Positions 504 to 41,457 of a DNA stretch of 64,000 nucleotides are shown piece by piece. Under the pieces are notes generated by a model, which saw nothing but the letters and a program-made list of their open reading frames with translations, searched no databases and was not told where the DNA came from. Within the stretch, counting starts at the first letter, position 1, and each line of letters starts with the position of its first letter. The translations under genes were made by a program, and so were the position numbers. The DNA is taken from the IMG/VR virus record IMGVR_UViG_3300036770_004723, positions 186,001 through 250,000 of that record; one strand, written 5' to 3'.

Positions 504-893
504 ATGAAAATGAAAATTAAGGTTAGATTAATCTCTACTTCGGCATCTAATAGTAAAACTCCAGAAATTAAATCAAAAATATCTGAATTGGCTTCTTTGC
601 TTTTTGAGTCAAAAAATAAAATAATTAAAGAACTTAAAGTAACCAAGCCTTTAGTTAAATCTGTTGAATCACTAGGTTACGCTGTTCGATTGGCGCGTAA
701 GTCTCACGTAGCGCAGAATAAATTAGATGATCTTGCTTCTTTGCTTGGTGTTAATCCAGCACATTTAACATCTGCTGTAGATAAAACAGGTTATTGTCTT
801 CATTTCAGTTCAGGTGCTGCAACTAAAGCCATAGCTTCTTTAAAAAGAATGGCTAAGGCAGAATCTGTGGAGAGTTCTTCTAAAAAAGCCTAA
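504..893 (+). CDS. Basic putative internal head protein with SxS leader
   Basis: N-terminus MKMKIKVRLISTSAS; Lys-rich. Confidence 0.6.
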   Translation: MKMKIKVRLISTSASNSKTPEIKSKISELASLLFESKNKIIKELKVTKPLVKSVESLGYAVRLARKSHVAQNKLDDLASLLGVNPAHLTSAVDKTGYCLHFSSGAATKAIASLKRMAKAESVESSSKKA

Positions 894-1114
894 TAGAGAG
901 TAACCTAAGAAAAGAATAAGATCTTTTAGATAAAGGACTTGAAATTGCGGCCAAATGAATTTGCTTTTGCTGATCGGGTAGAAACTTGTTGTTAAAAATT
1001 CTAAAACTCACGATGTAAAAAGCTTTAATTACTCCGGCAAAAACTATTACATATAACATCACAGAATCTGCGACTGCTCTCCCATTTAAACGACGTTAGT
1101 ATTAAGGAAGCACA

Positions 1115-1669
1115 ATGAAAATTTTCGTATCGCAATCAGCTGAAGTTACACAGCAAACTTTAAAACGTAAGATGAAAATCGGCGCTAAAGTACAATTACT
1201 TATGGTCGCTTCTCCTTCAGAAATAGGAACTTTAGGTCGAGGCAAAGCATCTGTAACAATAGCACATAATTATGTTGTTACAGATATTCAAACAACTAAA
1301 TCAGGTGACATTAAAAACTGTACACTTACAGTAAAAGGACCTAAGCCTTCACCGACATTAGGTTTAAAATCTGTTGAAGTACTAACCGCAACTACATTGG
1401 CTAAGTTGATGTCAACTAAACTTAATAAAGATTCAAAAGTTGGAACTAAATCTTTAAAGTTTGTCACGGTAAAATCTAAAGACACTGCTATGGGTAACGC
1501 TAAAGATTCCAAGTTAGCTCAACTTAAAGATAAAGTTAAAGAACTTGAATCTGCATATAAAAAGGCGATATCAGATTACCATAAAGCAGAAACTGCTGTT
1601 GATAAGGCAGATAATGCACTTGATAAAGCGAAACGTGCTTTAGATCTTTATATGAGTAAAACGCTGTAG
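1115..1669 (+). CDS. Basic putative internal head protein (SxS leader), paralog of 2033..2866
   Basis: SD AAGGA; MKIFVSQSAE; C-terminal coiled coil. Confidence 0.65.
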   Translation: MKIFVSQSAEVTQQTLKRKMKIGAKVQLLMVASPSEIGTLGRGKASVTIAHNYVVTDIQTTKSGDIKNCTLTVKGPKPSPTLGLKSVEVLTATTLAKLMSTKLNKDSKVGTKSLKFVTVKSKDTAMGNAKDSKLAQLKDKVKELESAYKKAISDYHKAETAVDKADNALDKAKRALDLYMSKTL

Positions 1670-2032
1670 GTGGTTTACTTCCCACTAAAGTTAAATTAAC
1701 TGACTCTATAAAGATCTCTGATCTTGATAAGGAATTCGAGTTTGTTGAGTTTAAAGCTTAATTGAAAACATGTGATTGCTGCAATTTAGATTCAGCAATT
1801 TTCTACATGTGACCATTTTATTTAAAAGAATTATCCACAAGGTAGGAGGTGATCCATATCTCGTGGTAACTACGCCACGTAAAAGATTGTAGTAGAGCAA
1901 TGGCTCGACTGCATAGCGCAGACAACTTCTTTCTATTAGAGGATTTGCCGTGAAAAACAATGTCAGTGGCGATGTAAGTAATTAAACGAGTGTGTGCGGT
2001 GTAAAAGCCGCACCTTTATAAAAGGGAAAACC
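1670..2032 (+). ncRNA. Candidate structured non-coding RNA or leader
   Basis: About 360-nt gap with hairpins ATTGCTG/CAGCAAT, CGTGG/CCACG, GTGCGG/CCGCAC, and AGGAGGTGATCC at 1844-1855. Confidence 0.3.
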
Positions 2033-2866
2033 ATGAAAGTCTTTATATCACATTCGGCAGAATTTTCTACTGCTATTAAAAAGAAATTGGTTGTAGGTAA
2101 TACTTTTATTCTTAATACCTTAATCCTAGAAAAACCTGAACCTAAGCGACCTTCAGTTGGATTTATTACTTCTGAAATTCGTGCAGAGTACGCTAAGAAA
2201 CCTGCGGTTGTTAAAATTGAAAAAACTGAATATTTTATTGCTGAAGTTGAAGAAACTAGAACAGGCACACTCAAAAGTATTACCGCTAACAGAGTCAGAG
2301 GTACAAAATCTTTTACTTCAATGCGTTCAGGTTATAATCCGCCTGCTGTTTTAAAGTTAAGTGCTGCCAAATTGGTTAAACTTCTTGATACCAGAATCAC
2401 AAAAACTGATTCAAAAGGTACGCAAAGCATTACACTTAAATCAGTGACAGGATCGAAATCTGAAAAACTTGCACCTTCTTCGGTTGACTCTAAAATAGCA
2501 AAACTTCGATCTCAAATTCAAGATCTGACAAATCAATTAAATGCCCTTGATAAAATTAAGAGTGCTGAACGGGCTAAGATCGAAGCAGAATCTAATAAAC
2601 GTGCTTTAGATAAATTGAAGGCCGACGGTTACACTTACATTCAAGAAATTGCAGGTAAACGTGTTAAGAAACGTACTTTAGTGGAAGCAAGAAACGTTAA
2701 TCCAGGTATAGGTAAATCTGCGGCTATTTATGCAGTTAAAGACGGTAAAGAGCAAAAAATACTAGTGTGGTCAGCAAAAGATCCGATAACAAAACGTATC
2801 TTTAAGGGCTATATGTGGTGGTTTACCACTAACACTGCTGAGAAAAAATTTAGCGCTGCTGTATAA
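2033..2866 (+). CDS. Basic putative internal head protein (SxS leader), paralog of 1115..1669
   Basis: Start moved to ATG 2033 after AAGGG; MKVFISHSAE. Confidence 0.65.
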   Translation: MKVFISHSAEFSTAIKKKLVVGNTFILNTLILEKPEPKRPSVGFITSEIRAEYAKKPAVVKIEKTEYFIAEVEETRTGTLKSITANRVRGTKSFTSMRSGYNPPAVLKLSAAKLVKLLDTRITKTDSKGTQSITLKSVTGSKSEKLAPSSVDSKIAKLRSQIQDLTNQLNALDKIKSAERAKIEAESNKRALDKLKADGYTYIQEIAGKRVKKRTLVEARNVNPGIGKSAAIYAVKDGKEQKILVWSAKDPITKRIFKGYMWWFTTNTAEKKFSAAV

Positions 2867-2932: not shown

Positions 2933-3277
2933 ATGAAGAAGCTTACCATTACATTAGTTTCTACATCAAAATCCGTTAATAGTATCCAACGTAATGGTAA
3001 GCATATTGAATATAATGGATTATTGTTTCCTGATTTTGATAAGCCTATTGAAATAAATGACAAACGATACAAACGTGCAGTGCTTGCACGTAAAGGCAAT
3101 GAATTCAAATTAATTCGTTATGGCCATGTTGATTACGAAGATTTTACTACACATAAAGATCCTGAACGTAGAGATCGTTTCAGGAAGAGGTTCCGTGGTA
3201 TATTAAAATCAGACGGTAAGCCAGCATACAAAGATAAGTGGCAAGCTGCTTATTGGGCGTATAACGATCTTTGGTAA
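2933..3277 (+). CDS. Small basic viral protein (DUF5754-like) with SxS leader
   Basis: KLIRYGHVDYEDFTTHKDPERRDRFRKRF...AAYWAYNDLW pattern; leader MKKLTITLVSTS. Confidence 0.55.
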   Translation: MKKLTITLVSTSKSVNSIQRNGKHIEYNGLLFPDFDKPIEINDKRYKRAVLARKGNEFKLIRYGHVDYEDFTTHKDPERRDRFRKRFRGILKSDGKPAYKDKWQAAYWAYNDLW

Positions 3278-3294: not shown

Positions 3295-3915
3295 ATGAAA
3301 ATCACACTGGTCTCAACAAGCAAATCTAGTTTAGTAAGTGAATCAGCTAAAAAACCTAGTCTTACAAGTTGGTTTGATAAACTTTCAAAAGAAGCTCAAG
3401 AAGAATATTTGGAAGAGCATCCAAATAGTATTTATGCTAAGCATTCACTGCGTAAGGCAAATCACAAAGCGCGTAAATCCCGTACAGGATCTATGGCGGA
3501 AAATTTAGATCCAAGATTTGCAGAAGCCTCTAAGGGTTTAGATCCTAACTTGCTAAAAGAAGTTTCGAAATTAGATGAAGATCTACAACAAGCTTTCACA
3601 GAACATTTTTCTGGCTATATAGATGAACTTATGCTGGATTTTGATAGTGAACAGACTGATGACGCTTTAAAGGGACGTAAAGCTCGCGCTATAAAAGCTA
3701 AAAAAGAAGCAGACTCTAGCACAGATCCTAGATCTAAAAAGAAAGCTACGCAAGAGTTTAAGAGAGCCTTTGCTGATTATAAAGAATTAAAACTAGCACA
3801 ACAAAAAGCACAGGATATTATGAAAACTCCTGGTAAGCTTGAAAAATTTAAAAATGAATTAGGTAGAAAACTTTTAAGTAAAATGAGCAAAGTACAAGCG
3901 AATACTAGCGTGTAA
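3295..3915 (+). CDS. Putative internal head protein (double SxS leader, HPxSxYAK module)
   Basis: MKITLVSTSKSSLVSESA; WFDKLSKEAQEEYLEEHPNSIYAK. Confidence 0.6.
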   Translation: MKITLVSTSKSSLVSESAKKPSLTSWFDKLSKEAQEEYLEEHPNSIYAKHSLRKANHKARKSRTGSMAENLDPRFAEASKGLDPNLLKEVSKLDEDLQQAFTEHFSGYIDELMLDFDSEQTDDALKGRKARAIKAKKEADSSTDPRSKKKATQEFKRAFADYKELKLAQQKAQDIMKTPGKLEKFKNELGRKLLSKMSKVQANTSV

Positions 3916-3954: not shown

Positions 3955-5313
3955 ATGATTATTAGTATATCATCAAGAACTTCAGGTAAAGAAGTAAAAC
4001 CAGTTAAGATTCCAAAGAGTATTGCTTTCGCTGCTGAAAAAACAAAGTCTCGTATTGTTAAAGCAGTACCAGGCCGTTATATTCTTAAAAATCGCAAAGG
4101 TATGTTTGTTGTAGTAAGATTCAAAGACGAAACACGTTATACCGCAAGTGTTGGTACAAAACTTTTTTCTGCATCAAGCACTGAATCTGATGTAGAAGAT
4201 TATTTTGTTGTTGAATCTGAATCTAATCAGCCTGGTGCTCGTAATTCAGCGGCAGGAAATAAGTTGGGTAAGAAAAATCATGCTAAAGGCATGTTGGCAG
4301 CTGGTTGGTGGTTATTTGTAAAACGTGCAGATGGTAAAATGCAAAAGGCATATATAGGTGGTCGTATTAGTGGCCGTCGCCTATTAGGTTTATTAGATCC
4401 TTCAACAGTTAAAACTGAAGAACCGAAGAAACCTATCAAACCAAAAGCAAAAGCAGGTAAATTTAAAGTTGTTAAATTGAACGGTAGAAATTTATACGAC
4501 CTGAAGATAAAAGGTAAGAGTGCTGCTACTCTCAGTGCAACTCAAAAAGTTTCAAACATCAAATCTATGAAAAAATTAGGTCTTGATGATAAAGAGATTC
4601 AAGAAATTTTATCTCAACTTAAAACGGAACCACCTAAAACAGTGAAAGATTCATTAAAAGAACGTAAAGAAGAATCGAAGAGGAATGCAGACTCGCCACT
4701 GAAACAGAGAGTTAGACAACTTAATAAAGAACAGATGGCGCGTGACAAAGCTAATGAGAATTTCAGCAACAAAAAAGCACCAGAATTAAAGAACTACGGT
4801 ACGGATATGCGTACATTAGTAGATGCCATAGTAGTAGCAAGCGCTTCAAAAGATCCAAAAACACTCACTAAATATGTGAAAGAAATTGCTGCGAAAGCGC
4901 ATGAAGCTTGGGCTGCCCAATTTAGAAAAGATAATCCTGATCAAAAATCCCGCGTTAAAGCTACGAAAGATGCTGATTGGATTAAAGCAAATGGATCAGA
5001 TAAAGTTGACATTTTAAATACTAAATTTGATGACTTACCTTCTGACTGGCAAGCTGAAAATTTAAAAGGGGGTACAGCGTCACTTGCTGCTTTCATGAAA
5101 GCAGGTAAAGTGATCTCAAAAGATCCAAAAGCAGATATTTCAATACCTTTGGAAAAAGCTTCTGATGAAGTACATAAGAAGTGGCTGGAACGTAATGGAG
5201 CATGGGCGCAAGAAGATCAAAAAGTTTCATACGCTAAACTAAGTGAAACTGAGAAACAAAAAGATCGAGACTTCATTGCCAATACTATTAAAGTATTGTC
5301 GAAATACCGTTAA
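3955..5313 (+). CDS. Modular putative head protein with C-terminal tandem RyR-like domain
   Basis: N-terminal ~150 aa paralogous to 5820..7451; AHEAW...DDLPSDWQ and VHKKWLERNG..W..VSYAKLSETEKQKDR repeats. Confidence 0.6.
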   Translation: MIISISSRTSGKEVKPVKIPKSIAFAAEKTKSRIVKAVPGRYILKNRKGMFVVVRFKDETRYTASVGTKLFSASSTESDVEDYFVVESESNQPGARNSAAGNKLGKKNHAKGMLAAGWWLFVKRADGKMQKAYIGGRISGRRLLGLLDPSTVKTEEPKKPIKPKAKAGKFKVVKLNGRNLYDLKIKGKSAATLSATQKVSNIKSMKKLGLDDKEIQEILSQLKTEPPKTVKDSLKERKEESKRNADSPLKQRVRQLNKEQMARDKANENFSNKKAPELKNYGTDMRTLVDAIVVASASKDPKTLTKYVKEIAAKAHEAWAAQFRKDNPDQKSRVKATKDADWIKANGSDKVDILNTKFDDLPSDWQAENLKGGTASLAAFMKAGKVISKDPKADISIPLEKASDEVHKKWLERNGAWAQEDQKVSYAKLSETEKQKDRDFIANTIKVLSKYR

Positions 5314-5331: not shown

Positions 5332-5715
5332 ATGAAAATCAAACTGTTCATAAGTGAATCTAATTGGTTTTCGGATCTAACTGAGAAAGCAAAAAAGCTT
5401 TATATAAAGGAACACCCTGAGAGTAAATATGCAAAACAATTAAGTGAACCTTCAGCTGCTAAACAAAGTGTACGTAAGATGGAAGTATACTTTATTAAAG
5501 ATGTAGACAGATTTGTTCAAATTGTGCGTATTGATCCTAAACTACTTTTTAAACACTTCTTTATGAAGCCATCGCCTCCTTATGATATGGAGTTGCATGA
5601 AGTAGTTAATGGTGTCACAAAAGGTAAAACTTTAGATCTTCCTAGATCCGCTTTAGATGCTGCACACAAAGAAAATTTAATAGGCACACGAGTTATGCTT
5701 GTTGAATTTAAATAA
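5332..5715 (+). CDS. Putative internal head protein (SxS leader, HPxSxYAK module)
   Basis: MKIKLFISESNWFSDLTEKAKKLYIKEHPESKYAK. Confidence 0.6.
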   Translation: MKIKLFISESNWFSDLTEKAKKLYIKEHPESKYAKQLSEPSAAKQSVRKMEVYFIKDVDRFVQIVRIDPKLLFKHFFMKPSPPYDMELHEVVNGVTKGKTLDLPRSALDAAHKENLIGTRVMLVEFK

Positions 5716-5819: not shown

Positions 5820-7451
5820 ATGACTAAACCTGCTAATTCTGTTAAGCCTGTACGTGAAGGGCAGAAACAGAAAGATAAGAAGCCTGTGGTCATTCCAAAA
5901 AGTATTAAGTTTGCAGCTGAAAAAACTAAGAGTCGCATTTCATTTGCGATTCCTGGTCGCTACATTCTTCAAAACCGTAAAGGAATGTTCGCAATTGTTC
6001 GAATCAGTGAAGACACTAAAATGTCTCCGTCAATCGTCACCAAAGTATTCAAAGCAACTGCCAGTGACATTGATCTGACTGAAGATCAGATCTTTGCACT
6101 TGAGCCTGTTGAGTTAGATTCCTTATCAGAATCTAATCAACCTGGACCTAAAAATTCAAGTGTTGGCAATAAACTAGGTAAGAAAACACGGGCACCTAAT
6201 GTACTAGCTAAAGGCTGGTGGATGTTCCGTAAAGGCAAAGATGGTAAAACAGCTAAAGCCTATATCGGTGGTCGTATTAGTGGTCGTCGTTTACTTGCTT
6301 TGTTAGATCCAGCTCAAGCACCAAAACCTAAAACAGAAGTTGTTGATCAAATTGGTAAGAAACCAGTTGTCGATACAAAAAAGATTGCTGAACTCACTAA
6401 AATCTACAAAAAACTTGGTGAGGGTATTAAACAAGCTAAAGAACGTTTAACTACTTTAAAGCGCGCTACTTCTAAAATCAGTTTAAAAGCAAAGATTAAA
6501 GAAGCGATGGAAAAACGTAAAGAAATCGCGGATCAAATCAAAGCATTAAAGTCTGGTGTTAAAGTAGAAGCGAAACCTGCGGAAACAAAACCTAAAGTTG
6601 ACGCAAAACCTAAGGCTACACAGGTTAAAACAAAAGCAGATATATCTGCACTGTCCCCTAGCCAACAAGTTTCATTTAAAAAGTTAAAAACACAAGGCAC
6701 AGAACTAGTTAAAAAGATTAAAGAATTTCAGACAAAGATGGAATCTCTTAAATCAAAACCAGCTAAAGCAAAAGTTCAATCAGCTATTGATGAATTGATG
6801 AAGTTAAAGAACGCTATTGCTAAAAAACTTCAAATGTATTTAAAGAAAGCACGAGATAAAAATACTGAACCTAAAGAAGCAGCCGTTGTTAAAAAGCCAG
6901 AGCCTGCTAAAGCTGAACCTAAAGCTGTTAAGGTTAAACCAAAGGCACCTGCAAAAAAACCTGAACCTATGAGTCAGGAAAAGAAAGAAGCCAAGGCCGA
7001 AGTAAAAGATCGAGAGAGCAAAATTGATGTTCTCGTTGAGAAACATGATAGTCTTAAAGAAAAAATCGAAAAGATTAAAGACCCAAGACAGAAGGCGAAA
7101 CTTCAATCTGCAATTGATGCCATCAACAAACGGATTGAAATCAACGCCGCTAAAAAGTCTGGAGCCAATAGTCGTTTAAAATCTACAAGTGCTGAAGATA
7201 TTTATTTCCAAACTTATAGTGGTGCCGTTCAACATGCTGTGGATACCGCTACAAAAAAGGGTTACGGCTACGATCAAGATGATTATGACCGTATCGTAGC
7301 CAACAATAGTAAAAAACCTTCAGCAGGTAAAACAACTAAATTTATATTGCCTTTAATAAAAGAAGGTAAAAGGTCAGGGCTAACAGTGGCAGTTTACTGC
7401 ACTGACGCAAATACCCCAAAACCTTATGAACTCACTTACTATATACATTAA
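5820..7451 (+). CDS. Lys-rich modular putative head protein
   Basis: Shares N-terminal domains with 3955..5313; coiled-coil and K/P/A-rich linker; separate C-terminal domain ending YELTYYIH. Confidence 0.65.
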   Translation: MTKPANSVKPVREGQKQKDKKPVVIPKSIKFAAEKTKSRISFAIPGRYILQNRKGMFAIVRISEDTKMSPSIVTKVFKATASDIDLTEDQIFALEPVELDSLSESNQPGPKNSSVGNKLGKKTRAPNVLAKGWWMFRKGKDGKTAKAYIGGRISGRRLLALLDPAQAPKPKTEVVDQIGKKPVVDTKKIAELTKIYKKLGEGIKQAKERLTTLKRATSKISLKAKIKEAMEKRKEIADQIKALKSGVKVEAKPAETKPKVDAKPKATQVKTKADISALSPSQQVSFKKLKTQGTELVKKIKEFQTKMESLKSKPAKAKVQSAIDELMKLKNAIAKKLQMYLKKARDKNTEPKEAAVVKKPEPAKAEPKAVKVKPKAPAKKPEPMSQEKKEAKAEVKDRESKIDVLVEKHDSLKEKIEKIKDPRQKAKLQSAIDAINKRIEINAAKKSGANSRLKSTSAEDIYFQTYSGAVQHAVDTATKKGYGYDQDDYDRIVANNSKKPSAGKTTKFILPLIKEGKRSGLTVAVYCTDANTPKPYELTYYIH

Positions 7452-15457: not shown

Positions 15458-15464
15458 TATTACT

Positions 15465-15492: not shown

Positions 15493-15512
15493 TCATTCAG
15501 GGAACACACATT

Positions 15513-15854
15513 ATGAAACGTGTTGCTTTTAATCTGGAAAGTAAATCAGTTGACTACAAAGATATTAATAGTACTACTCCAGTTTTAAAATTTCGACGGC
15601 CAAAACGACGAATGAAGCTCAGAGTAAAAAGACCTAAACCTAATACAACAATAGGAATACTACGTAAAAAACTGGCCAGCATTAGAAGTAAAATAGTTAA
15701 ACGTTTAGATGACACTAAATTCAGATTAGGCAATAAAGCTTTATTACCTAAAAAGAAAATGGAAGCAAATAAGTTTTACAATCAGTATAAAACATTAAAG
15801 ATGCGACTAGATAAATTGCAGTCTATAAAGAAAAATCCACAAAAATTAATGTGA
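15513..15854 (+). CDS. Very basic protein with LESKS leader
   Basis: MKRVAFNLESKSV; R/K-rich. Confidence 0.6.
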   Translation: MKRVAFNLESKSVDYKDINSTTPVLKFRRPKRRMKLRVKRPKPNTTIGILRKKLASIRSKIVKRLDDTKFRLGNKALLPKKKMEANKFYNQYKTLKMRLDKLQSIKKNPQKLM

Positions 15855-28317: not shown

Positions 28318-28770
28318 ATGAAGCTTAATATACATTTATGTGGTTTTATTTCTGTTTCTCAAGGAAGTAATATTGATGTAAGTTACGCATTTAAAAAAGC
28401 AATAAAAGCTTATATTAATAACCAAAGAATTTTACCTTCGAAAATTGAAAATGGATTAGAGGCAGATGCTGAAGATACTTTAGTCTTAGGTATTTTAAAA
28501 TGTATTCCATACGTCTTACAAGATATTAATTCAAAGATTGTTATTTTTGAAACAAAAGACGGAACTAAACTTAAATCTTGCGTTATATCTGACTCACGTA
28601 TTGTATATGACAATGCAAGTGCTTTCCGTATAGTACCTAAGAACGATGTAATTACACAAGAAAACAAGCCTTTTGTTTATAAAGGCTTAGGTAACAAGAG
28701 CAGTATCTACTTTCCTTATGTTTCTTTTACACATCAAACTTTAGAAAAACATATTAAAAAAATAAGCTGA
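28318..28770 (+). CDS. Hypothetical protein with SxS leader
   Basis: MKLNIHLCGFISVSQ; SD GAGG. Confidence 0.55.
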   Translation: MKLNIHLCGFISVSQGSNIDVSYAFKKAIKAYINNQRILPSKIENGLEADAEDTLVLGILKCIPYVLQDINSKIVIFETKDGTKLKSCVISDSRIVYDNASAFRIVPKNDVITQENKPFVYKGLGNKSSIYFPYVSFTHQTLEKHIKKIS

Positions 28771-31062: not shown

Positions 31063-31611
31063 ATGAAAATCTTAATTAGCCTATCAAACGAAAAAATAAA
31101 TAAGAGTAGCGCAACGTTCGGTCCACTTACTGTAGTAGCGAATTTTGCTAACAAAAATATGTACAGTTGTACATGGGCAAATAAGATGAAAAATTCATCT
31201 ACTATATTGACCAAACTTGGATTTAAAAGCTATAGTGTCGTAGTAACTGGTCCAAATTTGCCTGAAAGTTCTCAAGCTTTTAAAGATTTAACTTCAGCTG
31301 CTTTAGGTTTCTTTAGTAATTGCAGTACAGTGCGTTTAGAAGACCTTAATATTGTTAATGGCAGGAAATGGGCAGCGGATTGGATCAAAAACGTAGAAAA
31401 TGTTTCTACGTTAAATGTACGTCTTGACATTAGAAGTAGAGAGCGCGACAATCTTCATATTCCTGTAACTGTAGGAACTGATGTTAAACGGCGCGGTGTA
31501 TTACTGTCTATTACTGAAATGAGTGCTAAATGCCGTGTAATGTTATTAAATGCGGATGGCAGCAATGGTAATGTTCTTGAATTGCCAAAAGATCAAATTT
31601 GGATTGAATAA
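31063..31611 (+). CDS. Putative head protein with SxS leader
   Basis: MKILISLSNE. Confidence 0.6.
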   Translation: MKILISLSNEKINKSSATFGPLTVVANFANKNMYSCTWANKMKNSSTILTKLGFKSYSVVVTGPNLPESSQAFKDLTSAALGFFSNCSTVRLEDLNIVNGRKWAADWIKNVENVSTLNVRLDIRSRERDNLHIPVTVGTDVKRRGVLLSITEMSAKCRVMLLNADGSNGNVLELPKDQIWIE

Positions 31612-31620
31612 GGAATAGCT

Positions 31621-34428
31621 ATGTTTCCTATGGTGCAGCAGTACTTAAAAATAGTAAATGATTTAGGATTAGTTCCTTTCGTTTCTTTAAATACCTCTAA
31701 TCAAACTTCAGTTAGTGAAGTAAATTCTGTTAATAGATTGACCTCTGTAGAAAAAGACTCTAATAGTCTTTCATTTATACCTCAACTGTGTATCGATCAA
31801 GATACTGGATACATGAAAGATGATGTTACAGGCGTTTATTATACTTTAAATAGGCTTTATATAGGAACACGGCCTGTAACAGTTTTCTTAAAAGCTTTAG
31901 ATATAGATCCAGAACTAGCTTTACCTAGTCATTTAGTTTGCTCTGTCGGGTACAGTAAAAAACTAAATGAATGGGTTGCTTGGAATTTGACAGGTGCCGA
32001 TTCTTTTTGCAGTCGTGAGGCAGCAGTTTCCTGGGTAAATGAAACATCCAACGTAAACATTGATCGTTATTGTAGTCTTGATAAAATGTTTGCTAGTGCT
32101 GTAATCACATCTAGAGTATTTTTTAAAGCCTTGGATTGCTATTTTGGTAACATTACAGAATCCTTACCTGTAGCCGAATATAAAGAGCAGAATCTAGATA
32201 AAATTTTTGAACACATAGATCTCGATCTAGATAAAATTTTTGAAAACTGTAACGAAAAAGATTCAGGCGCGTTCAATGAAATGGTCGAGCCTTTACTAGC
32301 TTTATTTAAACAAAAAGACGTAGAAAAATCTAAATTTATCTCAGATACTGCTAGGTCTGCAAATCCATTGTACTACCGTATAAGTGGAGAACATAGACAA
32401 CATAATAGAAATATGCCTAAACAAGCTTTGACTGGTCAAAGACACAGCGGCGCACATTATCAACATAATGTACCAACTGATTCAAACCTAACCAAACCAC
32501 ATACTGGAATAAAAATAGGAATTAAAAGAAGTGGTGATCATGTCCAACATAATCATACTGGACCTACTTTTAGTTCTTTGAATAATGAAAGTTTTGTATC
32601 AGAAAGTGCCGAAGATCCAACCAAATATGAATGGTATCGTTATGTTCCAGTTAATGGCCGTAGTATTAGCCTTAAAGGATATCATAAAGAATTTGATCAG
32701 GCCAGTATAGATGATACAGAAGTTTACGGTATTAGACAAATTCGAGGCAAAGAAGAATTCTACTTGACCTTTGGTAATGCTCAAGATTTCGGTATACTTT
32801 TCAGGGTTCCTACTGCTTTGGTTAATCGCGCTATAAAAAATAGCAAAACATATAAAGGTAAGGTTCCTTTAGGTAGAGCAGTAAAGCCTGTTGATGTAAA
32901 AGAAGTGAAGCCTTCTCAGGTTAAAGAAAAAGTAAATAAAATAGTACCAAAAACTGAAAAGCCTTTAACTATAAAAGAACGTCGTGAGGCAGAAAGGCAA
33001 AGACTTTTAGAAGAATCTAAAAATAAGCGACTTCAACCTCAAGTACGCGACCAAGTTATACGTCCCGATGGCAAGATTAATTTAAGTGACATTGATGCCA
33101 TTAATGTTAAATCGCGCGATGTTACATATTTAGGTCTTTACCAACAAAGCATATTCTCAGACGATTACCATGTAGTAATTAATGACGAACGCGATGAATT
33201 ATATTCAAACATAATGAGTGAAATAACTCGCGGTAAGAATAGTAATCCTATAGCGTATTTATTTCGCGTTAGAACAAGTCAAGATTGGGTAGCCCCATAT
33301 CTAGGTGTATCCGCTAATAAGATGCGTATGAACAGTGCTATTGTTAAACGGATAATTGCTTCAAATAAACACGAAGTAATTAAAGGCATTAAAAACGTAG
33401 CAAACTTTGATGAAAAGCCTGAGCTACCTAAAGCAAGTAAGTTCAAACGTGCTGAACCTATTTATTACGGCAATAACTTTGCCGTACTTTCTGAAATAAA
33501 ATCTGCGATTCTCCAAGGCTATTTCACTAAAGCATTCAAAGTAACCGATATTAAAAATCGCAAATCTGTTACTATTGACGATGAAAAAGCCAAGAACGAT
33601 CCGCACTTTGGTATTGAGTCTACGGATACAGATGAATTTATGTTAGTGCTTTCTGCACAAAACAATAATCCGTTCTATCAACATGAAGCAGACGAGATAC
33701 TACAAAGACTTTCACGTATTTATGGACCTACTATTAGAACTGTAGTAAAAGAAAGTAAAACAAGTGAAGGTAAGTTAATGATGTTCGTGGTTATACGTTT
33801 GGCCTTGAAAAAGGTCAGCGATGAACACTTACATAGAAGTAAAGCACTGCATGATCTTGTAAGAAATAATCTAAACAATAAACAGCAAGTGCAGAAAGGC
33901 AGCGATTTTGTTGAAAAACTGGACACATTAAAATCTGAATTCAACAAACTTTACAAGAAATATGAACAAGAAAAGATTCAGGTATCTGCAAAACGAAGCC
34001 ATGAAGAATTGAACTTAAAAACTGAGATCGACAAACTTAAGTTACAACTTCAAGCCAAAGGCACAGCTAATGTAAGACCTATTCTGGATAAGCACGATAA
34101 ACTTGTTCAACAATTAAGTAAATTGCCTGCTAAATACGACGACATGTTAAAAACGGTTGAAGACATTTATTCGGAAGAAATATCTAGGCACCAGCGAGAG
34201 ATTCGTGTTTTAACAAAATCACATTCGTTGAACTTTAAAAATCAATTGATCTTTAATATGCCTGTATACAAAGCCAAATTTGGCCAAACCTTGGTTAGTG
34301 TGGAGGTTGTTGACTACAATATACCTGACGGCACTGTCGGAGTTCGTATTGTACGTGGCGGTGATAGAACAGTCCATTATATAACAAACTTATATTCATT
34401 TTTCGATGAAGAAAAAGTTTTCCCTTAA
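31621..34428 (+). CDS. Large multidomain putative virion protein
   Basis: 935 aa; three SGxHxQHN repeats; internal FVSESA followed by a domain shared with 15865; C-terminal coiled coil. Confidence 0.6.
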   Translation: MFPMVQQYLKIVNDLGLVPFVSLNTSNQTSVSEVNSVNRLTSVEKDSNSLSFIPQLCIDQDTGYMKDDVTGVYYTLNRLYIGTRPVTVFLKALDIDPELALPSHLVCSVGYSKKLNEWVAWNLTGADSFCSREAAVSWVNETSNVNIDRYCSLDKMFASAVITSRVFFKALDCYFGNITESLPVAEYKEQNLDKIFEHIDLDLDKIFENCNEKDSGAFNEMVEPLLALFKQKDVEKSKFISDTARSANPLYYRISGEHRQHNRNMPKQALTGQRHSGAHYQHNVPTDSNLTKPHTGIKIGIKRSGDHVQHNHTGPTFSSLNNESFVSESAEDPTKYEWYRYVPVNGRSISLKGYHKEFDQASIDDTEVYGIRQIRGKEEFYLTFGNAQDFGILFRVPTALVNRAIKNSKTYKGKVPLGRAVKPVDVKEVKPSQVKEKVNKIVPKTEKPLTIKERREAERQRLLEESKNKRLQPQVRDQVIRPDGKINLSDIDAINVKSRDVTYLGLYQQSIFSDDYHVVINDERDELYSNIMSEITRGKNSNPIAYLFRVRTSQDWVAPYLGVSANKMRMNSAIVKRIIASNKHEVIKGIKNVANFDEKPELPKASKFKRAEPIYYGNNFAVLSEIKSAILQGYFTKAFKVTDIKNRKSVTIDDEKAKNDPHFGIESTDTDEFMLVLSAQNNNPFYQHEADEILQRLSRIYGPTIRTVVKESKTSEGKLMMFVVIRLALKKVSDEHLHRSKALHDLVRNNLNNKQQVQKGSDFVEKLDTLKSEFNKLYKKYEQEKIQVSAKRSHEELNLKTEIDKLKLQLQAKGTANVRPILDKHDKLVQQLSKLPAKYDDMLKTVEDIYSEEISRHQREIRVLTKSHSLNFKNQLIFNMPVYKAKFGQTLVSVEVVDYNIPDGTVGVRIVRGGDRTVHYITNLYSFFDEEKVFP

Positions 34429-35257: not shown

Positions 35258-36928
35258 ATGAAAAGCAATTTACTGTCTATTTCCGCAGTATCAAAACAAT
35301 CCACATTAGCATTTATTAAAATTATTTCCGCTGCTTCTGTTGCATTTATGGAAAATTCGCCTTTATCTTCTTCTATTAAGTCTGATTTAAGATCGTGGAA
35401 TGCTGATGCTTCTGAATTCATCAAAAGATTTAATTTAGATAAAAAAGCTTTCTCCCGTATCATATCACAGCTGCAACTCGATAAAGTTAATCTTGTTGAT
35501 GAAATAGGTGACGTAATGGTAGGTGTGCGTGAAGCACATAGATCAAAAGAACTTATCAAAGAACTAGATCTGAGTAAGCTTCATTTGGATTTTTTAAAAT
35601 GCTTGATAAGTGTTACTTTAGGCGGCAGTGAAACAGCTGTTAAGAACTTATATAAGAATATAAGTAAGTTAGGTGATCCGAAGTTAAGTGCTTTATTTAT
35701 GCAGGAAACTGAATTAGATCAAAGTGATTTAGTTGCAGAACTCTCAAGATTTTGTAAAAATGTTTTCAAAAAGCCCGAACAAGATCTTAATGTAGAAGAT
35801 AAGAATAAGTTAAAGGCTAAAAATCCTGAACTCTATAAAGAATATTTAAAATTGTTACGTGATATTAATGAAGTAACCAAACAAGCTGTTAGTCAATTTG
35901 TACGTAACTCTGGCCAGCAATTAGTAAAAGCCACGGAACTCGTTAGATATTTGAAGACTAATAAAATCCGATCTAAAGTACCTGAAGGCTTTAATGGCTG
36001 GATAGATGAAACAGGTGCTTATTACAACACAAATAAAGTAAAGCTAGAAGGTGCCATTACAGGCAGATTGGAAGCAAATCCAAAATATGATCCTACAACA
36101 GATGATACATACGTATTCTTGCATTATCCACTATTTGGATCAGGGCAGCCTCAACGTATCTACACTGTTAATTACAGAAAAGGTAAAGTGAGTAAAAAAT
36201 TTAATGCTGTAGGTGCATTAATTAAAGATTTACCTGCGGCACGTAAAAAATGGTTACATGAGTTAAAAACTGGAAAACACAATGAAGCAGATACTGTTGC
36301 AGCCTTAATTCTTGAATTGATTTATGAAACTTCTGCACGTATCGGAACAGCAGGACAAAGCGGTCAAGGTATTAGTACACTATTAGTCAAAAACTACACA
36401 GGTAGAGGCCAAGGTTATTTTACACTTAATTATTTAGGTAAGAGTGGTGTAAAACAGAATCATAAAATTCTGACTAATCGCATTGAAACCAAACTTTTAA
36501 AAGAACTGTTAGAATCATTGACTACAGGTAAAAAACCTAATGATTTGATCATGACTGTGAATAAAGGAAGAACCGAAAAACACATTAACGGTACTTACGT
36601 TAATAAATACCTTAGATCTTTAGGTGTTGATCCAAGTGTTACCCTTCACAAATTCCGCCATGCCCGAGGATCTATTGTTGCTCAAGCTCAATTAGATAAG
36701 GCTCCGTCATTCAAAAATGCTTCGGAAGCAGAAGTAAATAAATGGTTTATTGAAGCAATGAAGAAAGTCGGATCTGAGTTAGGTCATGTTAGCGGCGATA
36801 AAGTCACTGCCACTACTGCAATCCAAAACTATATTGATCCGCAGTTAATTAAAGATTGGTTTGATAAAGTTGGTGTAAGACCAGGCAGTGTTATTCAAAA
36901 TGCACTTAATAAGGCAGGTAAGGATTAA
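35258..36928 (+). CDS. DNA topoisomerase IB with long N-terminal extension
   Basis: Catalytic pentad SARIG (R), YLGKSG (K), HKFR (R), LGH (H), NYIDP (Y). Confidence 0.8.
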   Translation: MKSNLLSISAVSKQSTLAFIKIISAASVAFMENSPLSSSIKSDLRSWNADASEFIKRFNLDKKAFSRIISQLQLDKVNLVDEIGDVMVGVREAHRSKELIKELDLSKLHLDFLKCLISVTLGGSETAVKNLYKNISKLGDPKLSALFMQETELDQSDLVAELSRFCKNVFKKPEQDLNVEDKNKLKAKNPELYKEYLKLLRDINEVTKQAVSQFVRNSGQQLVKATELVRYLKTNKIRSKVPEGFNGWIDETGAYYNTNKVKLEGAITGRLEANPKYDPTTDDTYVFLHYPLFGSGQPQRIYTVNYRKGKVSKKFNAVGALIKDLPAARKKWLHELKTGKHNEADTVAALILELIYETSARIGTAGQSGQGISTLLVKNYTGRGQGYFTLNYLGKSGVKQNHKILTNRIETKLLKELLESLTTGKKPNDLIMTVNKGRTEKHINGTYVNKYLRSLGVDPSVTLHKFRHARGSIVAQAQLDKAPSFKNASEAEVNKWFIEAMKKVGSELGHVSGDKVTATTAIQNYIDPQLIKDWFDKVGVRPGSVIQNALNKAGKD

Positions 36929-36948: not shown

Positions 36949-37215
36949 ATGAAACTAACCTCTATTTCTTTTACAAAAAAATCCACTATTTCCTTAGATG
37001 CTAAAACATTAATGACGGAAATTGATCGCGCACTAGCACGAGTTGATAAGAATATAGCCGTAGAAAGAAGAAAAATGCAGATATTGAAATCAAAATCGGA
37101 AGTGAGCGATTCAGCTAATTTATCTTTGCATGAATTGCTTGGTAACAAACAAGTTCTTTTAAGTGTTAAACTGGCCATTGAGAAAAATGATTTTAAAGAT
37201 TTAAAATCTATATAA
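36949..37215 (+). CDS. Small coiled-coil protein with SxS leader
   Basis: MKLTSISF. Confidence 0.55.
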   Translation: MKLTSISFTKKSTISLDAKTLMTEIDRALARVDKNIAVERRKMQILKSKSEVSDSANLSLHELLGNKQVLLSVKLAIEKNDFKDLKSI

Positions 37216-38424: not shown

Positions 38425-38772
38425 ATGAAAATCTTTGTTTCTACATCAAATAATGCACATGAACAAGCTGGTAAAAATGTCAAAGTAGCTGTTGCATTTG
38501 CTTATAACAAAACAAATAATAAAGAATTGGATATAGTAGTTAATTTACGTAATGAACTCACTATCTACGTTCAGTTTCTTACAACAAACAAAAACATTCA
38601 GAGCAATCTTACTAATTACGTTCTTAAGAAAACAGTCGCTGATGAACTTAATGAAAAATTTGGTTCTGATTTTGATGAAGGCTTTATATCAAGTGGCGGT
38701 CCTGAAGGTGTGTCTGTTCAATACACAGCACGTACAACCTTAGGAAAGTTATTGAATAAGCAAGGACAATAG
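38425..38772 (+). CDS. Putative internal head protein with SxS leader
   Basis: MKIFVSTSNN. Confidence 0.6.
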   Translation: MKIFVSTSNNAHEQAGKNVKVAVAFAYNKTNNKELDIVVNLRNELTIYVQFLTTNKNIQSNLTNYVLKKTVADELNEKFGSDFDEGFISSGGPEGVSVQYTARTTLGKLLNKQGQ

Positions 38773-38775: not shown

Positions 38776-39144
38776 ATGTATATTTGGATGTCTGCTATCT
38801 TAGCTTCTTTGTGTGTGCAAATACCGAATGTATTAGCTATATCAAAATACGGTAACGGTATAATATTAAAAGAGGCAATTACATTATCTTTATTGTGCCT
38901 ACCCTTTACTTTCGTAGCCTGTATATGCTACATGTATTTTTATTCGAATATCGCATTGAAGATCAGCTACCCTTCAGCTATTTTAATTCTGTACGCACTG
39001 AATTTATTGATAGCTACTTTAGTGCAAGGCTTTATACTAAAAACAAAATCTATGTATTTGGTGGATTACATATCAGTCAGTTTGATTTTAGTGGGATTAG
39101 TTTTAACAGTATTAAGAGAGCAGATTAAAGGATACTTTTCATGA
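38776..39144 (+). CDS. Four-helix membrane protein (SMR/DMT-like topology)
   Basis: Four hydrophobic segments in 122 aa. Confidence 0.55.
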   Translation: MYIWMSAILASLCVQIPNVLAISKYGNGIILKEAITLSLLCLPFTFVACICYMYFYSNIALKISYPSAILILYALNLLIATLVQGFILKTKSMYLVDYISVSLILVGLVLTVLREQIKGYFS

Positions 39145-40925
39145 AACGTATTAGAGTAAATTTGGAGAGTATAAGTGCTTTAAAGCCTTCTCAGTATAGA
39201 CAATTTGTACGTGGTTGGAAGCCAAGTCAAGATTTTTTAACCATATTTAGAAGAGAATCCAAAGGCAAGTCTCCATTTCGTGTACTAATAAGCCCAGAGC
39301 AAAACGCCATTAACTTAAAATCTATTATACCTAAAGAACTAATGGAATACTTGTTAAAAAATAACTATAATATGGACCTTATAGGTTACGTGACGGGCTA
39401 TGTAAATGATAAATATGGACGAAAACAAAAGTTAGGTAAAGTAATAGCGGATCATCCGAATCTTTTAAATCCCTTTAACTCCGACGAAAGCCGCAAAAAA
39501 GATTTGATGGAATTAAATAAAGAAAGTTTTGTCGTTGCCATAAGTCACCACCCCTATGACATAGCAGGTATGAGTACAGATCGCGGATGGACAAGTTGCA
39601 CTAATCTATTAGGTGAGTATGAAAAATCTGCACCTATGAAAGTACAACCTGAAATAGATAACAAAAGTATAATAGCCTATTTAGTACGTAGATCAGATAT
39701 TAATATAAATAAGCCTGTGGCCAGAGCTATAGCTAAAAAATTTGTAAGTGATGCAGGTTCCGAGAAATATGTAATTGACGCTGTTTATCCTGATAGAAAC
39801 CCTTCTCTTATAAATACTTTCCAAAAATGGCTAGATAAAAACATAAATTCAGGTCTGAAAAAAGTCCCGAATGATTTTTCAATGTACACTTTGCCTTTCG
39901 GTATGTATTCTGACGGATTTTCTGACACCGAAATTGTTAACGGGTTTTCTGAAACAGCTGACGAAGAACAACTATTAAATTTGTTTCAGGGCATAGAATA
40001 CTTACCTTCATACTCTAATATGTCAGCTTTTGTATCCGCCCATTACAATAATAAAAAAGCTTTGTCCAAGATAAAGAATGATGATATGTATAGGTCTCAA
40101 TTAATAACGTATTGTCTGAGATTTTTAGACTTATTTGACACAAACAAGCTTAACAAATTCATAGTAAATTTGTTAACAGATATGTACGATAATCGCTATC
40201 CATTTGAGGCCGCTGTATTAATAGCTAAATATTTACCTAGACGCAAAATTACAATACTGTCTCTAGATGAATCAAATAAATTACTTGATAATATGTTTAA
40301 AAGTCGAGAAGCCAAAGATTCTATTAACTACGCAAAGCTGCATGGTGGATCTGCCATTAACCTATTTAAAATAGGACTTTTGGCCTTTTTATCTTATGAA
40401 ACGAAGCCTTTGAATTGTTTTTCACGGTTATATGCAAACTGCCTTAACCCAGAAGATATTTTGACGCCAATGTTAGATAAAAGTTTTGAAATAACAAAAG
40501 AGTACGGAAGATTTTTAGCTGCGGCTATAATGGCACAATCTCCTTACGTAGATAAGAAAAAACTATATATTAAACTGTTTCAAGATCCTAAAATAAACTT
40601 TAACTGGGCCGATGAATATTCAGTTGTTTTGTTACATAGATCACAGCCTAAAGAAAGCAAGCTAGGTGTAGAACTTACTATCATGACAAATTTATTGAAT
40701 GACGTGAATGTTAATGTATTAAATGTATACACGGATGTTTTGATAAAATGTATAAAAGAACTTGAGTCGCTTCTTTCGGATAAAACTACAAACGTATTTA
40801 AGTACAATCAAAGGTATCTTCAAAATAATCTTAATAGGTTAGAGGTGCTTGGTGATATTGAAGGTTTGGCCTTTCTTAATCTTGTTATCAATCAATGCCC
40901 TAAGGTTGACTATTGGCTAAACTGA
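39141..40925 (+). CDS. Large putative virion protein with SxS leader
   Basis: MKRIRVNLESISA; conserved-looking ISHHPYDIAGMSTDRGWTSC core. Confidence 0.6.
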   Translation: MKRIRVNLESISALKPSQYRQFVRGWKPSQDFLTIFRRESKGKSPFRVLISPEQNAINLKSIIPKELMEYLLKNNYNMDLIGYVTGYVNDKYGRKQKLGKVIADHPNLLNPFNSDESRKKDLMELNKESFVVAISHHPYDIAGMSTDRGWTSCTNLLGEYEKSAPMKVQPEIDNKSIIAYLVRRSDININKPVARAIAKKFVSDAGSEKYVIDAVYPDRNPSLINTFQKWLDKNINSGLKKVPNDFSMYTLPFGMYSDGFSDTEIVNGFSETADEEQLLNLFQGIEYLPSYSNMSAFVSAHYNNKKALSKIKNDDMYRSQLITYCLRFLDLFDTNKLNKFIVNLLTDMYDNRYPFEAAVLIAKYLPRRKITILSLDESNKLLDNMFKSREAKDSINYAKLHGGSAINLFKIGLLAFLSYETKPLNCFSRLYANCLNPEDILTPMLDKSFEITKEYGRFLAAAIMAQSPYVDKKKLYIKLFQDPKINFNWADEYSVVLLHRSQPKESKLGVELTIMTNLLNDVNVNVLNVYTDVLIKCIKELESLLSDKTTNVFKYNQRYLQNNLNRLEVLGDIEGLAFLNLVINQCPKVDYWLN

Positions 40926-40941
40926 ATTTATAGGCTAAAAT

Positions 40942-41457
40942 ATGCGAATATTTATATCACTTAGCTCAAGTATTTACTTTCGAGGTTTGACAGAAAAATT
41001 CTCTAAAGCATATCAAGACAAATCTCATATTATTTGGGTAACACCTGACAAAAGCTACGCACAGAACTACACAGAGGCCGAAGGAAGTTTGTTGACATAC
41101 GATCTTAAACTAGGCACTGCGTTTAACTTTGGATTTAGATCGTTAGATACTAGCGTTAAAATACAAGAAGTTTTGTCCCGCGTACAGCGTGGTATATTGT
41201 CTGCTTTCAGAGAAAAGATTATTGATCGTGATTTAGCAATGAAGCTAAATGATGAAGTAATAGATCTAATTGAGAAACATGAGAAAAGTAATAAATATAT
41301 GAAGGTATGGGAATGGTACTCTAAGGAGAAGAACATTTCTAGCATTTTGTTACGTGCTAAATTTACTCACATAGATGCAATGGAAGGTATTGATAACAAT
41401 ATAAAAACTATTGGCATTCTTGATAGAAACATTATTAAGAAAATACAGATGATATAA
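40942..41457 (+). CDS. ADP-ribosyltransferase-like protein with SxS leader
   Basis: YFRG strand, IWVTPDKSYAQNY, late acidic residue, ILDRNIIK end; ART-fold pattern. Confidence 0.5.
   Translation: MRIFISLSSSIYFRGLTEKFSKAYQDKSHIIWVTPDKSYAQNYTEAEGSLLTYDLKLGTAFNFGFRSLDTSVKIQEVLSRVQRGILSAFREKIIDRDLAMKLNDEVIDLIEKHEKSNKYMKVWEWYSKEKNISSILLRAKFTHIDAMEGIDNNIKTIGILDRNIIKKIQMI

What the first reader, a model, noticed from the sequence alone, without database searches (positions are those of the whole stretch)
504..41457. Shared 'MKI...S-x-S' leader on about 16 proteins: candidate capsid-targeting and maturation code for a virion cargo system
Seen in the N-termini: MKMKIKVRLISTSA (504), MKIFVSQSA (1115), MKVFISHSA (2033), MKKLTITLVSTSK (2933), MKITLVSTSKSSLVSESA (3295), MIISISS (3955), MKIKLFISESN (5332), MKRVAFNLESKSV (15513), MLISISV (15865), MKLNIHLCGFISVSQ (28318), MKILISLSN (31063), MKSNLLSISA (35258), MKLTSISF (36949), MKIFVSTSN (38425), MKRIRVNLESISA (39141), MRIFISLSS (40942), and loosely MNTPYLDSLSA (27348). 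The downstream bodies are mostly unrelated. I found no such leader on the roughly 40 minus-strand genes or on the sheath, main tube and spike. Known analogy: T4 internal proteins carry a ~10-aa capsid-targeting sequence removed by gp21, and phiKZ gp175 cuts head proteins; both cut after Glu. Inference: a basic beta-strand address tag ending in a hydrophobic-x-S-x-S site, implying a Ser-directed prohead protease specificity, loads a diverse cargo into the head for ejection. It could be a portable packaging tag.
Basis: partly seen in the sequence, partly recalled or inferred. Interest (0 to 1): 0.92.

Follow-up and report, generated by a model that had tools for sequence, protein, structure and literature searches.

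The report
Shared leader marks prohead protease substrates
About thirty mostly basic proteins of this uncultured jumbo phage start with the same 6-15-residue leader, whose Ser-x-Ser core recurs at the capsid-protein and scaffold processing sites, so it is most likely the recognition site of the phage's head-maturation protease and a T4-like tag for loading proteins into the head.

Summary
All 17 listed N-termini carry M-(K)-φ-x-φ-S-x-S-(A/S/N). The strictest pattern occurs 12 times at N-termini against 0.56 expected. Genome-wide about 30 genes carry it, and some lie outside the window or on the minus strand. Conservation is at the protein level. The leader is a disordered add-on that orthologues gain or lose, and it is enriched at N-termini in five of six related jumbo phage genomes of the PaBG/NCTB group.

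The new result is that the same motif sits at conserved internal positions in head-assembly proteins:
- In the major capsid protein it ends at residue 74. A cut there removes 19.8% of the mass, against about 20% reported for PaBG.
- An acidic scaffold-like protein has 15 copies against 1.4 expected.
- It also occurs in Lys-rich internal proteins, and at the N-terminus of a T4-gp21-fold protease encoded 1.1 kb upstream of the window.

A predicted complex places leader residues 1-11 on the protease surface around the invariant Ser188, but this is weak support. Tagged proteins are strongly basic.

The protease-site reading is well supported in silico. Head targeting, cleavage and ejection remain inferred, because no proteomics exists for this virus. 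I rate it a new variant of a known kind, the T4 and phiKZ leader systems, with Ser/Ala instead of Glu specificity.

The parts
1..500 (+). 3' part of a tagged 231-aa gene whose start and leader (MKITIRMFSLSN) lie 195 bp upstream of the window
504..893 (+). tagged protein, leader ...RLISTSA (start 504 or 510), pI 10.0
   Evidence: G001 orthologue MKVNILISESA
1115..1669 (+). tagged protein, MKIFVSQSA; paralogue of 2033; leader used in the complex prediction
2033..2866 (+). tagged protein, MKVFISHSA
2933..3277 (+). tagged protein, ...TLVSTSK; DUF5754; matches part of PHROG 220 'minor head protein and DNA pilot'
3295..3915 (+). tagged protein with two motif copies (LVSTSK, LVSESA)
3955..5313 (+). 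Lys-rich head-module protein with leader MIISISS and a second, internal motif VESESN at aa 86-91
5332..5715 (+). tagged protein, MKIKLFISESN
5820..7451 (+). Lys-rich paralogue without N-terminal leader but with conserved internal motif LDSLSE at aa 99-104
7555..9843 (+). 762-aa scaffold-like protein: two alpha/beta + zinc-ribbon modules, a long acidic region and a helical C-terminal domain; 15 copies of phi-x-S-x-S, including a conserved one about 20 aa from the C-terminus
   Evidence: 15 vs 1.41 expected, Poisson 3.7e-11
10596..11684 (+). major capsid protein; internal motif FASLSN at aa 69-74 (nt 10800-10817) at the boundary of the N-terminal delta region
15513..15854 (+). tagged small basic protein (pI 11.3) between the tube genes, ...NLESKSV
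15865..16512 (+). tagged protein, MLISISV, then a KMPT-N domain from residue 11; leader disordered in the model
27348..28256 (+). loosely tagged protein (YLDSLSA); the G001 orthologue has a clearer leader (MKIESLVSLNA)
28318..28770 (+). tagged protein, ...CGFISVSQ
31063..31611 (+). tagged protein, MKILISLSN
31621..34428 (+). 935-aa protein with a conserved internal motif FVSESA (aa 325-330) immediately before a KMPT-N-like W-Y segment; candidate internal cleavage site
35258..36928 (+). tagged type IB topoisomerase (Pfam Topoisom_I), leader ...LLSISA followed by the conserved body start VSK.ST
36949..37215 (+). tagged small protein, MKLTSISF
38425..38772 (+). tagged protein, MKIFVSTSN
39141..40925 (+). 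tagged 594-aa protein, ...NLESISA; orthologues MVSLSA (G005) and MLSLAA (G004)
40942..41457 (+). tagged protein, MRIFISLSS

Best explanation
The motif φ-x-S-x-S-(A/S/N) is the recognition site of this phage's head-maturation protease. That protease is a T4-gp21/herpesvirus-fold serine protease encoded at genome 184059-184853, 1.1 kb upstream of the window.

At internal positions the motif marks the maturation cuts. These remove the 74-residue delta region of the capsid protein, break up the acidic scaffold-like protein and trim the Lys-rich core proteins.

Placed right after the start Met of about 30 otherwise unrelated, mostly basic proteins, the motif works like the T4 capsid-targeting sequence. 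It brings the protein into the assembling prohead core, together with the protease, which carries the same motif. It is then clipped off, leaving the cargo beside the DNA. The cargo includes a type IB topoisomerase and KMPT-N-domain proteins.

Shown here: the motif, its enrichment, its conservation, its co-occurrence at head-protein sites, the protease fold, and the disordered add-on nature of the leader.

Inferred: cleavage itself, the scissile bond, the targeting function, and ejection into the host.
For: Enrichment and level of selection:
- The strict pattern occurs at 12 N-termini against 0.56 expected.
- Ser codon families are mixed as in the whole genome, so selection is on the peptide.

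The leader is an add-on, not part of the fold:
- Bodies are mostly unrelated by BLASTP.
- Residues 1-9 of the 15865 protein have pLDDT below 50, and the fold starts at residue 12.
- A Pfam KMPT-N domain starts right after the leader in two proteins.
- PaBG and G004 orthologues of the 15865 family lack the leader entirely, and leader length varies among orthologues.

Conservation in relatives:
- N-terminal φ-S-x-S, observed/expected: own 31/11.6, G001 34/9.9, G002 20/9.2, NCTB 17/8.1, G005 21/7.5, G004 15/6.7.

Same motif at conserved internal sites:
- Capsid protein aa 69-74. A cut there removes 19.8% of the mass here and 21.0% in PaBG. PaBG's capsid protein was reported to lose about 20% at maturation (PMC7412058).
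- The homologous phage G capsid protein gp27 (PDB 6wkk, E 8e-22) begins exactly at this position.
- The scaffold-like protein has 15 copies against 1.41 expected, p 3.7e-11, and holds 5 of the 10 best internal hits in the proteome.
- The motif is also conserved in the Lys-rich paralogues and in the 935-aa protein.

Protease:
- PHROG 18299 'head maturation protease', E 1e-90.
- Orthologue of the PaBG gene annotated as head maturation protease, and homologue of phage G gp19 (E 4e-21).
- The model matches T4 gp21 (5jbl) with Z 9.7, rmsd 3.0 A over 139 residues, the only match with Z of 2 or more.
- His131 and Ser188 are invariant.
- Its own disordered N-terminus carries F-x-S-x-S-F in nearly all of 29 diverse homologues.

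Docking:
- Score 0.52 against best control 0.02. The mark was reached by 58 of 80 solved complexes and 2 of 110 mismatched pairs. The tool's verdict is weak support.
- The interface comprises leader residues 1-11 and protease residues 96-100, 186-196 (including Ser188) and 240-245.

Co-variation:
- The G004 clade uses Ala for Ser in leaders (A-x-A 26/11.4), at the capsid site and at the scaffold site.

Cargo-like properties:
- Tagged proteins have median pI 9.4 against 6.6 for the rest, p 2e-6.

Virion evidence in a relative:
- PaBG gp83 has a leader-like N-terminus sharing EAVAA with the PaBG capsid site. It is a Coomassie-visible virion protein (Table 1 of PMC7412058).
Against: - No proteomic or biochemical data exist for this uncultured virus. 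Cleavage, the scissile bond and virion location are all inferred.
- PaBG, the only relative with virion proteomics, shows no N-terminal enrichment of the motif (6/7.1), and its data are MALDI band identifications without termini.
- The complex prediction is rated weak by the tool, and the peptide is shorter than anything in its calibration.
- Some tagged proteins look like ordinary cytoplasmic enzymes (a P-loop protein at genome 58551; the 179460 family). Some tagged genes sit among tail genes, so not all need be head cargo.
- A shared protease site does not prove that the leader is sufficient for targeting.
- The profile-based counts are partly circular, because the profile was trained on the leaders.
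Confidence: 0.62

Rival explanations
1. The motif is only a protease cleavage site. Targeting of cargo to the prohead depends on other parts of each protein, and the N-terminal position merely allows removal of a few residues, for example to activate the protein or expose a new N-terminus.
For: The motif also works at internal positions, where no address function is needed. Nothing tested here shows that the leader is sufficient for packaging.
Against: A cut that removes only 6-12 residues from about 30 unrelated proteins has little obvious purpose without a role before cleavage. The protease carries the same motif on a disordered N-terminus, and the T4 precedent combines both roles. The hydrophobic residues before S-x-S and Lys at position 2 are conserved beyond what the internal sites show.
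Confidence: 0.2
2. The leader is not processed at all. It is a shared N-terminal strand used for binding a common partner such as a chaperone, the scaffold, the portal or an export machine, or it is a secretion or ejection signal of the Ser-rich type III kind.
For: The leader is short, amphipathic and Ser-rich. From memory, type III secretion signals have a similar composition; this was not tested here. The leader is disordered on its own.
Against: This does not explain the identical motif inside the capsid protein at the expected maturation boundary. It also does not explain the 15 copies in the scaffold-like protein, or the predicted docking against the protease's Ser188 region. The hydrophobic stretch of 3-5 residues is too short for a Sec or lipoprotein signal, and no Cys follows it.
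Confidence: 0.1
3. The similarity has no common function. It reflects common descent of duplicated genes, AT-rich codon bias that favours M-K-I starts, or a DNA/RNA element overlapping start codons.
For: Three paralogue pairs exist. Genome GC is 35%, and Lys at position 2 is common in AT-rich genomes.
Against: Most bodies are unrelated. Ser codons mix TCN and AGY as in the whole genome, and nucleotide identity over the motif is only 42%. The motif is kept in relatives with 38-50% GC. Enrichment is about 20-fold over the internal frequency.
Confidence: 0.04

Closest known systems
T4 capsid-targeting sequence of the internal proteins (IPI, IPII, IPIII, Alt), removed by the prohead protease gp21
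   Same: A leader of about 10 residues on otherwise unrelated, basic proteins. The leader ends in the motif that the same protease uses on the capsid protein and scaffold. The protease has the gp21 fold (Z 9.7).
   Different: T4 cuts after Glu in (L/I)-x-E (established knowledge). Here the conserved residues are Ser or Ala, with no Glu. There are about 30 tagged genes rather than a handful. The protease has an extra Cys/His zinc-ribbon-like insert and is not detected by Pfam S77. Packaging and cleavage are not demonstrated.
phiKZ gp175 and SPN3US gp245 processing of head and ejection proteins at (S/A/G)-x-E
   Same: A jumbo myovirus in which many head proteins carry propeptides removed at one short motif by a gp21-like protease (PMC5694885, PMC10052503; listed).
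   Different: A different phage lineage: an HK97-type capsid protein related to phage G gp27, and no T4-type portal hit. No Glu at the site. Leaders here are far shorter than most phiKZ or SPN3US propeptides.
Herpesvirus assemblin maturation and release sites, (V/L/I)-x-A|S
   Same: The same protease fold superfamily. The site is built from a hydrophobic residue followed by small Ala/Ser residues (established knowledge, not tested here).
   Different: Eukaryotic virus. The sites lie in the scaffold and the protease itself, not on a set of cargo proteins. The register of the cut in the phage motif is unknown.
Phage G (Donellivirus) head genes gp19 (protease candidate) and gp27 (capsid protein)
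   Same: Homologous protease (E 4e-21) and homologous capsid protein (E 8e-22).
   Different: gp27 has no 70-residue N-terminal region. The phage G head-module N-termini that I read show no such leader.

Membership tests
T4-type capsid-targeting leader system (leader plus prohead protease) | A short N-terminal leader shared by otherwise unrelated proteins | tested here: met
T4-type capsid-targeting leader system (leader plus prohead protease) | The leader ends in the same motif that marks maturation sites in the capsid protein and scaffold | tested here: met
   The motif lies at capsid aa 69-74, 15 times in the scaffold-like protein, and in the Lys-rich proteins. This is sequence evidence only.
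T4-type capsid-targeting leader system (leader plus prohead protease) | Cleavage after Glu in (L/I)-x-E | tested here: not met
   The conserved positions are Ser/Ala. This is therefore not the T4 motif, only the same logic.
T4-type capsid-targeting leader system (leader plus prohead protease) | The leader is necessary and sufficient for packaging, and is absent from the mature virion protein | not testable with these tools
   No proteomics exists for this uncultured virus. PaBG gp83 in virions is only suggestive.
gp21/assemblin-fold prohead serine protease | Herpesvirus-protease-like fold | tested here: met
   AF2 model with pLDDT 84. T4 gp21 (5jbl) is the top Foldseek hit, and VIA-align gives Z 9.7 as the only match with Z of 2 or more.
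gp21/assemblin-fold prohead serine protease | Invariant His and Ser | tested here: met
   His131 and Ser188 are invariant in 29 homologues. Their catalytic role is inferred.
gp21/assemblin-fold prohead serine protease | Match to Pfam Peptidase_S77 or S78 | tested here: not met
   No hit at E up to 1 in the whole genome. PHROG 18299 matches at 1e-90.
phiKZ-type (S/A/G)-x-E propeptide processing | Glu at P1 | tested here: not met
   No conserved Glu follows the small residues.
Sec or lipoprotein signal peptide | A hydrophobic core of about 7 or more residues, with a lipobox Cys for lipoproteins | tested here: not met
   Leaders have 3-5 hydrophobic residues interrupted by polar ones, and no Cys. 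This was read from the sequence; no predictor was run.

The most novel reading that the evidence does not exclude
A minimal tag of 6-9 residues (M-K-φ-x-φ-S-x-S-A) is by itself sufficient to load any protein into the prohead of a whole clade of jumbo phages. It is removed by a gp21-fold protease that has switched from Glu to Ser/Ala specificity. The phage thereby delivers about 30 basic proteins into the host with its DNA. These include a type IB topoisomerase, much as poxvirus cores carry theirs.
Probability: 0.3. Interest if true: 0.8.

Novelty: new variant of a known kind. Interest (0 to 1): 0.62.

Why it matters
Maturation sites and cargo-loading signals are known experimentally for only a few phages: T4 and the phiKZ/SPN3US group. 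This finding gives a testable site and a candidate loading tag for a separate, widespread jumbo-phage lineage that includes PaBG, NCTB, Lu11, Erwinia and Dickeya phages and many uncultured genomes.

If it holds, the virion cargo could be read directly from genome sequence. The predicted cargo includes a topoisomerase, KMPT-N proteins and clusters of small variable proteins that resemble anti-defence cargo. A very short tag could also be used to package foreign proteins into large capsids. Finally, it would show that the gp21/assemblin protease fold has shifted specificity within phages.

Tried and rejected
Candidates for the protease that I rejected:
- The 230-aa gene between the scaffold-like gene and the capsid gene (9862-10554). 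Eleven orthologues share no invariant His, and the protein looks like a beta-rich structural protein.
- The 226-aa gene after the capsid gene (11854-12534). It has no catalytic pattern.

Searches that found nothing:
- Pfam S77, S78 and Portal_T4 across the whole genome.
- Megablast of the window against GenBank phages.

Analyses with limited power:
- A gapped-dipeptide enrichment scan was only sensitive enough to flag S.S in this genome and G001.
- PaBG shows no N-terminal enrichment.

Sources I could not use:
- The phage G structure paper (PMC7316594) is not held, so its data on gp27 processing could not be read.
- Literature searches found no description of this motif or of a cleavage motif for the PaBG group.

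Readings I considered and rejected:
- A DNA-level repeat or a promoter overlapping the starts (rejected).
- Simple paralogy (rejected).


Full report
**What the window is.** The window is part of a 286,584-bp IMG/VR virus record, at 186,001-250,000. GC content is 34.6%. It is an uncultured jumbo myovirus. Its sheath, capsid protein and many other genes are nearest to phage NCTB, Pseudomonas phage PaBG and the Erwinia and Dickeya jumbo phages. That group was described in PMC7412058. The plus-strand block 1-41,457 holds head, tail and baseplate genes.

**Check of the observation.**
- All 17 N-termini read as stated.
- The consensus is M-(K/R)-φ-x-φ-S-x-S-(A/S/N).
- The strictest pattern starts within the first 15 residues of 12 of 377 proteins, against 0.56 expected from internal positions.
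- A profile gives 36 N-terminal hits against 3.8 expected, about 30 of them convincing.
- Tagged genes also lie outside the window, and some are on the minus strand. They include five tandem small genes at genome 11,224-13,393.
- One tagged gene starts 195 bp upstream and ends at window 500.

**It is a peptide signal and an add-on.**
- The two conserved Ser positions use TCN and AGY codons in the genome-wide ratio. Nucleotide identity across the motif is only 42%.
- All-against-all BLASTP links only three pairs of tagged proteins.
- In an AlphaFold model of the 15865 protein, residues 1-9 have pLDDT below 50, and the first strand starts at residue 12.
- Pfam places a KMPT-N domain directly after the leader in two proteins.
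- Among orthologues the leader varies in length from 3 to 20 residues, while S-x-S-A stays directly before the conserved body. This is clear in the topoisomerase family and the 175810 family.
- PaBG and G004 orthologues of the 15865 family have no leader at all.

**Conservation in relatives.** I assembled six related genomes and called genes in the same way in each. N-terminal φ-S-x-S, observed against expected, was:

| Genome | Observed / expected |
|---|---|
| This genome | 31 / 11.6 |
| G001 | 34 / 9.9 |
| G002 | 20 / 9.2 |
| NCTB | 17 / 8.1 |
| G005 | 21 / 7.5 |
| G004 | 15 / 6.7 |
| PaBG | 6 / 7.1 |

In G004 the Ala version φ-A-x-A is also enriched, at 26/11.4.

**The key new result: the same motif inside head-assembly proteins.**
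- *Capsid protein (10596-11684).* It has FASLSN at residues 69-74. This aligns with LSLSA, ASMSN, VTSA and AVAAA in relatives.
  - A cut there removes 19.8% of the mass here and 21.0% in PaBG. PaBG's capsid protein was reported to lose about 20% on maturation.
  - The homologous phage G capsid protein (PDB 6wkk, E 8e-22) is only 282 residues long and begins exactly at this position. The first 74 residues here are therefore a separable delta region.
- *Scaffold-like protein (7555-9843, 762 aa).* It has two alpha/beta plus zinc-ribbon modules, a long acidic region and a helical C-terminal domain.
  - It contains 15 copies of φ-x-S-x-S against 1.41 expected (Poisson 3.7e-11).
  - It holds 5 of the 10 best internal matches in the whole proteome.
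  - One copy near the C-terminus is conserved.
- *Lys-rich paralogues (3955 and 5820).* They share a conserved internal copy at residues 86-91 and 99-104.
- *The 935-aa protein (31621).* It has a conserved copy at residues 325-330, directly before a KMPT-N-like segment.
- *Co-variation.* In the G004/PaBG clade, Ser is replaced by Ala or Thr at the capsid and scaffold sites. G004 leaders also use Ala.

**The protease.** A 264-aa gene at genome 184,059-184,853 (L055:14059-14853) lies 1.1 kb upstream of the window.
- It matches PHROG 18299 'head maturation protease' at E 1e-90.
- It is the orthologue of the PaBG gene annotated as head maturation protease.
- It is homologous to phage G gp19 at E 4e-21. 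A recent phage G paper calls gp19 a head maturation protease.
- Its model (pLDDT 84) has T4 gp21 as the top Foldseek hit. T4 gp21 is also the only VIA-align match, with Z 9.7 and rmsd 3.0 A over 139 residues.
- His131, Ser188 and a Cys/His cluster are invariant.
- Its disordered N-terminus carries F-x-S-x-S-F in nearly all of 29 diverse homologues. This suggests self-processing, or co-targeting with the cargo.

**Docking.** A predicted complex of the protease (residues 22-250) with the first 24 residues of the 1115 protein scored 0.52, against 0.02 for the best control.
- The mark was reached by 58 of 80 solved complexes and 2 of 110 mismatched pairs. The tool rates this as weak support, and the peptide is shorter than anything in its calibration.
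- The confident interface comprises leader residues 1-11. On the protease it comprises residues 96-100 (the invariant N-T-N-G-D loop), 186-196 (including Ser188) and 240-245.

**Cargo properties.**
- Tagged proteins are strongly basic: median pI 9.4 against 6.6, with 83% against 39% above pI 8 (p 2e-6). This matches what is expected of proteins that lie with DNA in a head.
- They include a type IB topoisomerase, which was noted earlier as typical of this phage group (PMC7824862). They also include KMPT-N proteins, a DUF5754 protein matching part of a 'minor head protein and DNA pilot' family, and many small proteins of unknown function.
- In PaBG, gp83 is a Coomassie-visible virion protein. 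Its N-terminus resembles a leader and shares EAVAA with the PaBG capsid site.

**Most likely mechanism.**
1. The protease recognises φ-x-(S/A)-x-(S/A)-(A/S/N).
2. Internal copies direct capsid maturation and scaffold breakdown.
3. N-terminal copies act as a T4-like capsid-targeting leader that is clipped after incorporation.

The motif statistics, conservation, site co-occurrence, protease fold and leader disorder are shown. Cleavage, the exact bond (after the second Ser or after the next Ala), targeting and ejection are inferred.

**Comparison with known systems.**
- The logic is that of the T4 internal proteins with gp21, and of phiKZ/SPN3US with gp175/gp245. Both of those cut after Glu, and here no Glu is conserved.
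- The site resembles herpesvirus assemblin sites, which have a hydrophobic residue, any residue, then Ala|Ser. This comparison rests on established knowledge and was not tested here.
- I found no paper describing this motif or any cleavage motif for the PaBG group.
- I therefore rate it a new variant of a known kind.

**Limits.**
- The gene calls are my own simple caller.
- The profile statistics are partly circular.
- PaBG, the only relative with a virion proteome, shows little leader enrichment.
- No experimental N-termini exist for any member of the group.

Noticed in passing
window 35258-36928: A poxvirus/eukaryote-type topoisomerase IB (Pfam Topoisom_I, E 1.6e-17) sits in the late structural block and carries the leader. 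In PaBG the orthologue lies next to the head genes. It may be a virion-packaged topoisomerase.
   Followed up: partly
window 7555-9843: PHROG 20988 and the PaBG record label this 762-aa protein an 'ATPase'. It shows no ATPase motif in the alignment. It consists of two alpha/beta + zinc-ribbon modules, a long Asp/Glu-rich region and a helical C-terminal domain, so it looks like a scaffold.
   Followed up: partly
window 15865-16512, 31621-34428; L055:5810-7486: Three proteins have the motif immediately followed by a KMPT-N domain (PF20294), twice at the N-terminus and once internally. Leader plus KMPT-N behaves as a recurring module.
   Followed up: partly
window 31621-34428: Residues 68-121 of the 935-aa protein give a sub-threshold match to Pfam Tad6, a Thoeris inhibitor (E 2e-5; 25.1 bits against a cut-off of 27).
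   Followed up: no
L056:2224-4393 (genome 11224-13393, minus strand): Five tandem small genes (101-168 aa) all start with near-identical leaders (MKI.IS.S). They have orthologues only in the closest relative. The arrangement is reminiscent of variable internal-protein clusters.
   Followed up: partly
window 12978-14597 and genome 162625-164283: Two paralogous tail sheath genes (32% identity), the hallmark of the PaBG group noted in PMC7412058.
   Followed up: no
window 14906-17432: Two tagged genes and one other small gene are inserted between the two tube-like genes. In PaBG the two tube genes are adjacent.
   Followed up: partly
window 9862-10554: A conserved 230-aa beta-rich, Gly-rich protein lies between the scaffold-like gene and the capsid gene. 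It is the orthologue of PaBG gp81, a virion protein seen in several gel bands. Its function is unknown; it could be a decoration or vertex protein.
   Followed up: partly
genome 142559-143383 (outside the window): A 274-aa protein has 5 copies of phi-x-S-x-S against 0.47 expected. It is the second strongest outlier after the scaffold-like protein.
   Followed up: no
L055:14059-14853: The protease family carries an invariant C-x-x-C ... C-x-H cluster, which T4 gp21 (165 residues in 5jbl) is too short to contain. It may be a zinc-binding insert.
   Followed up: no
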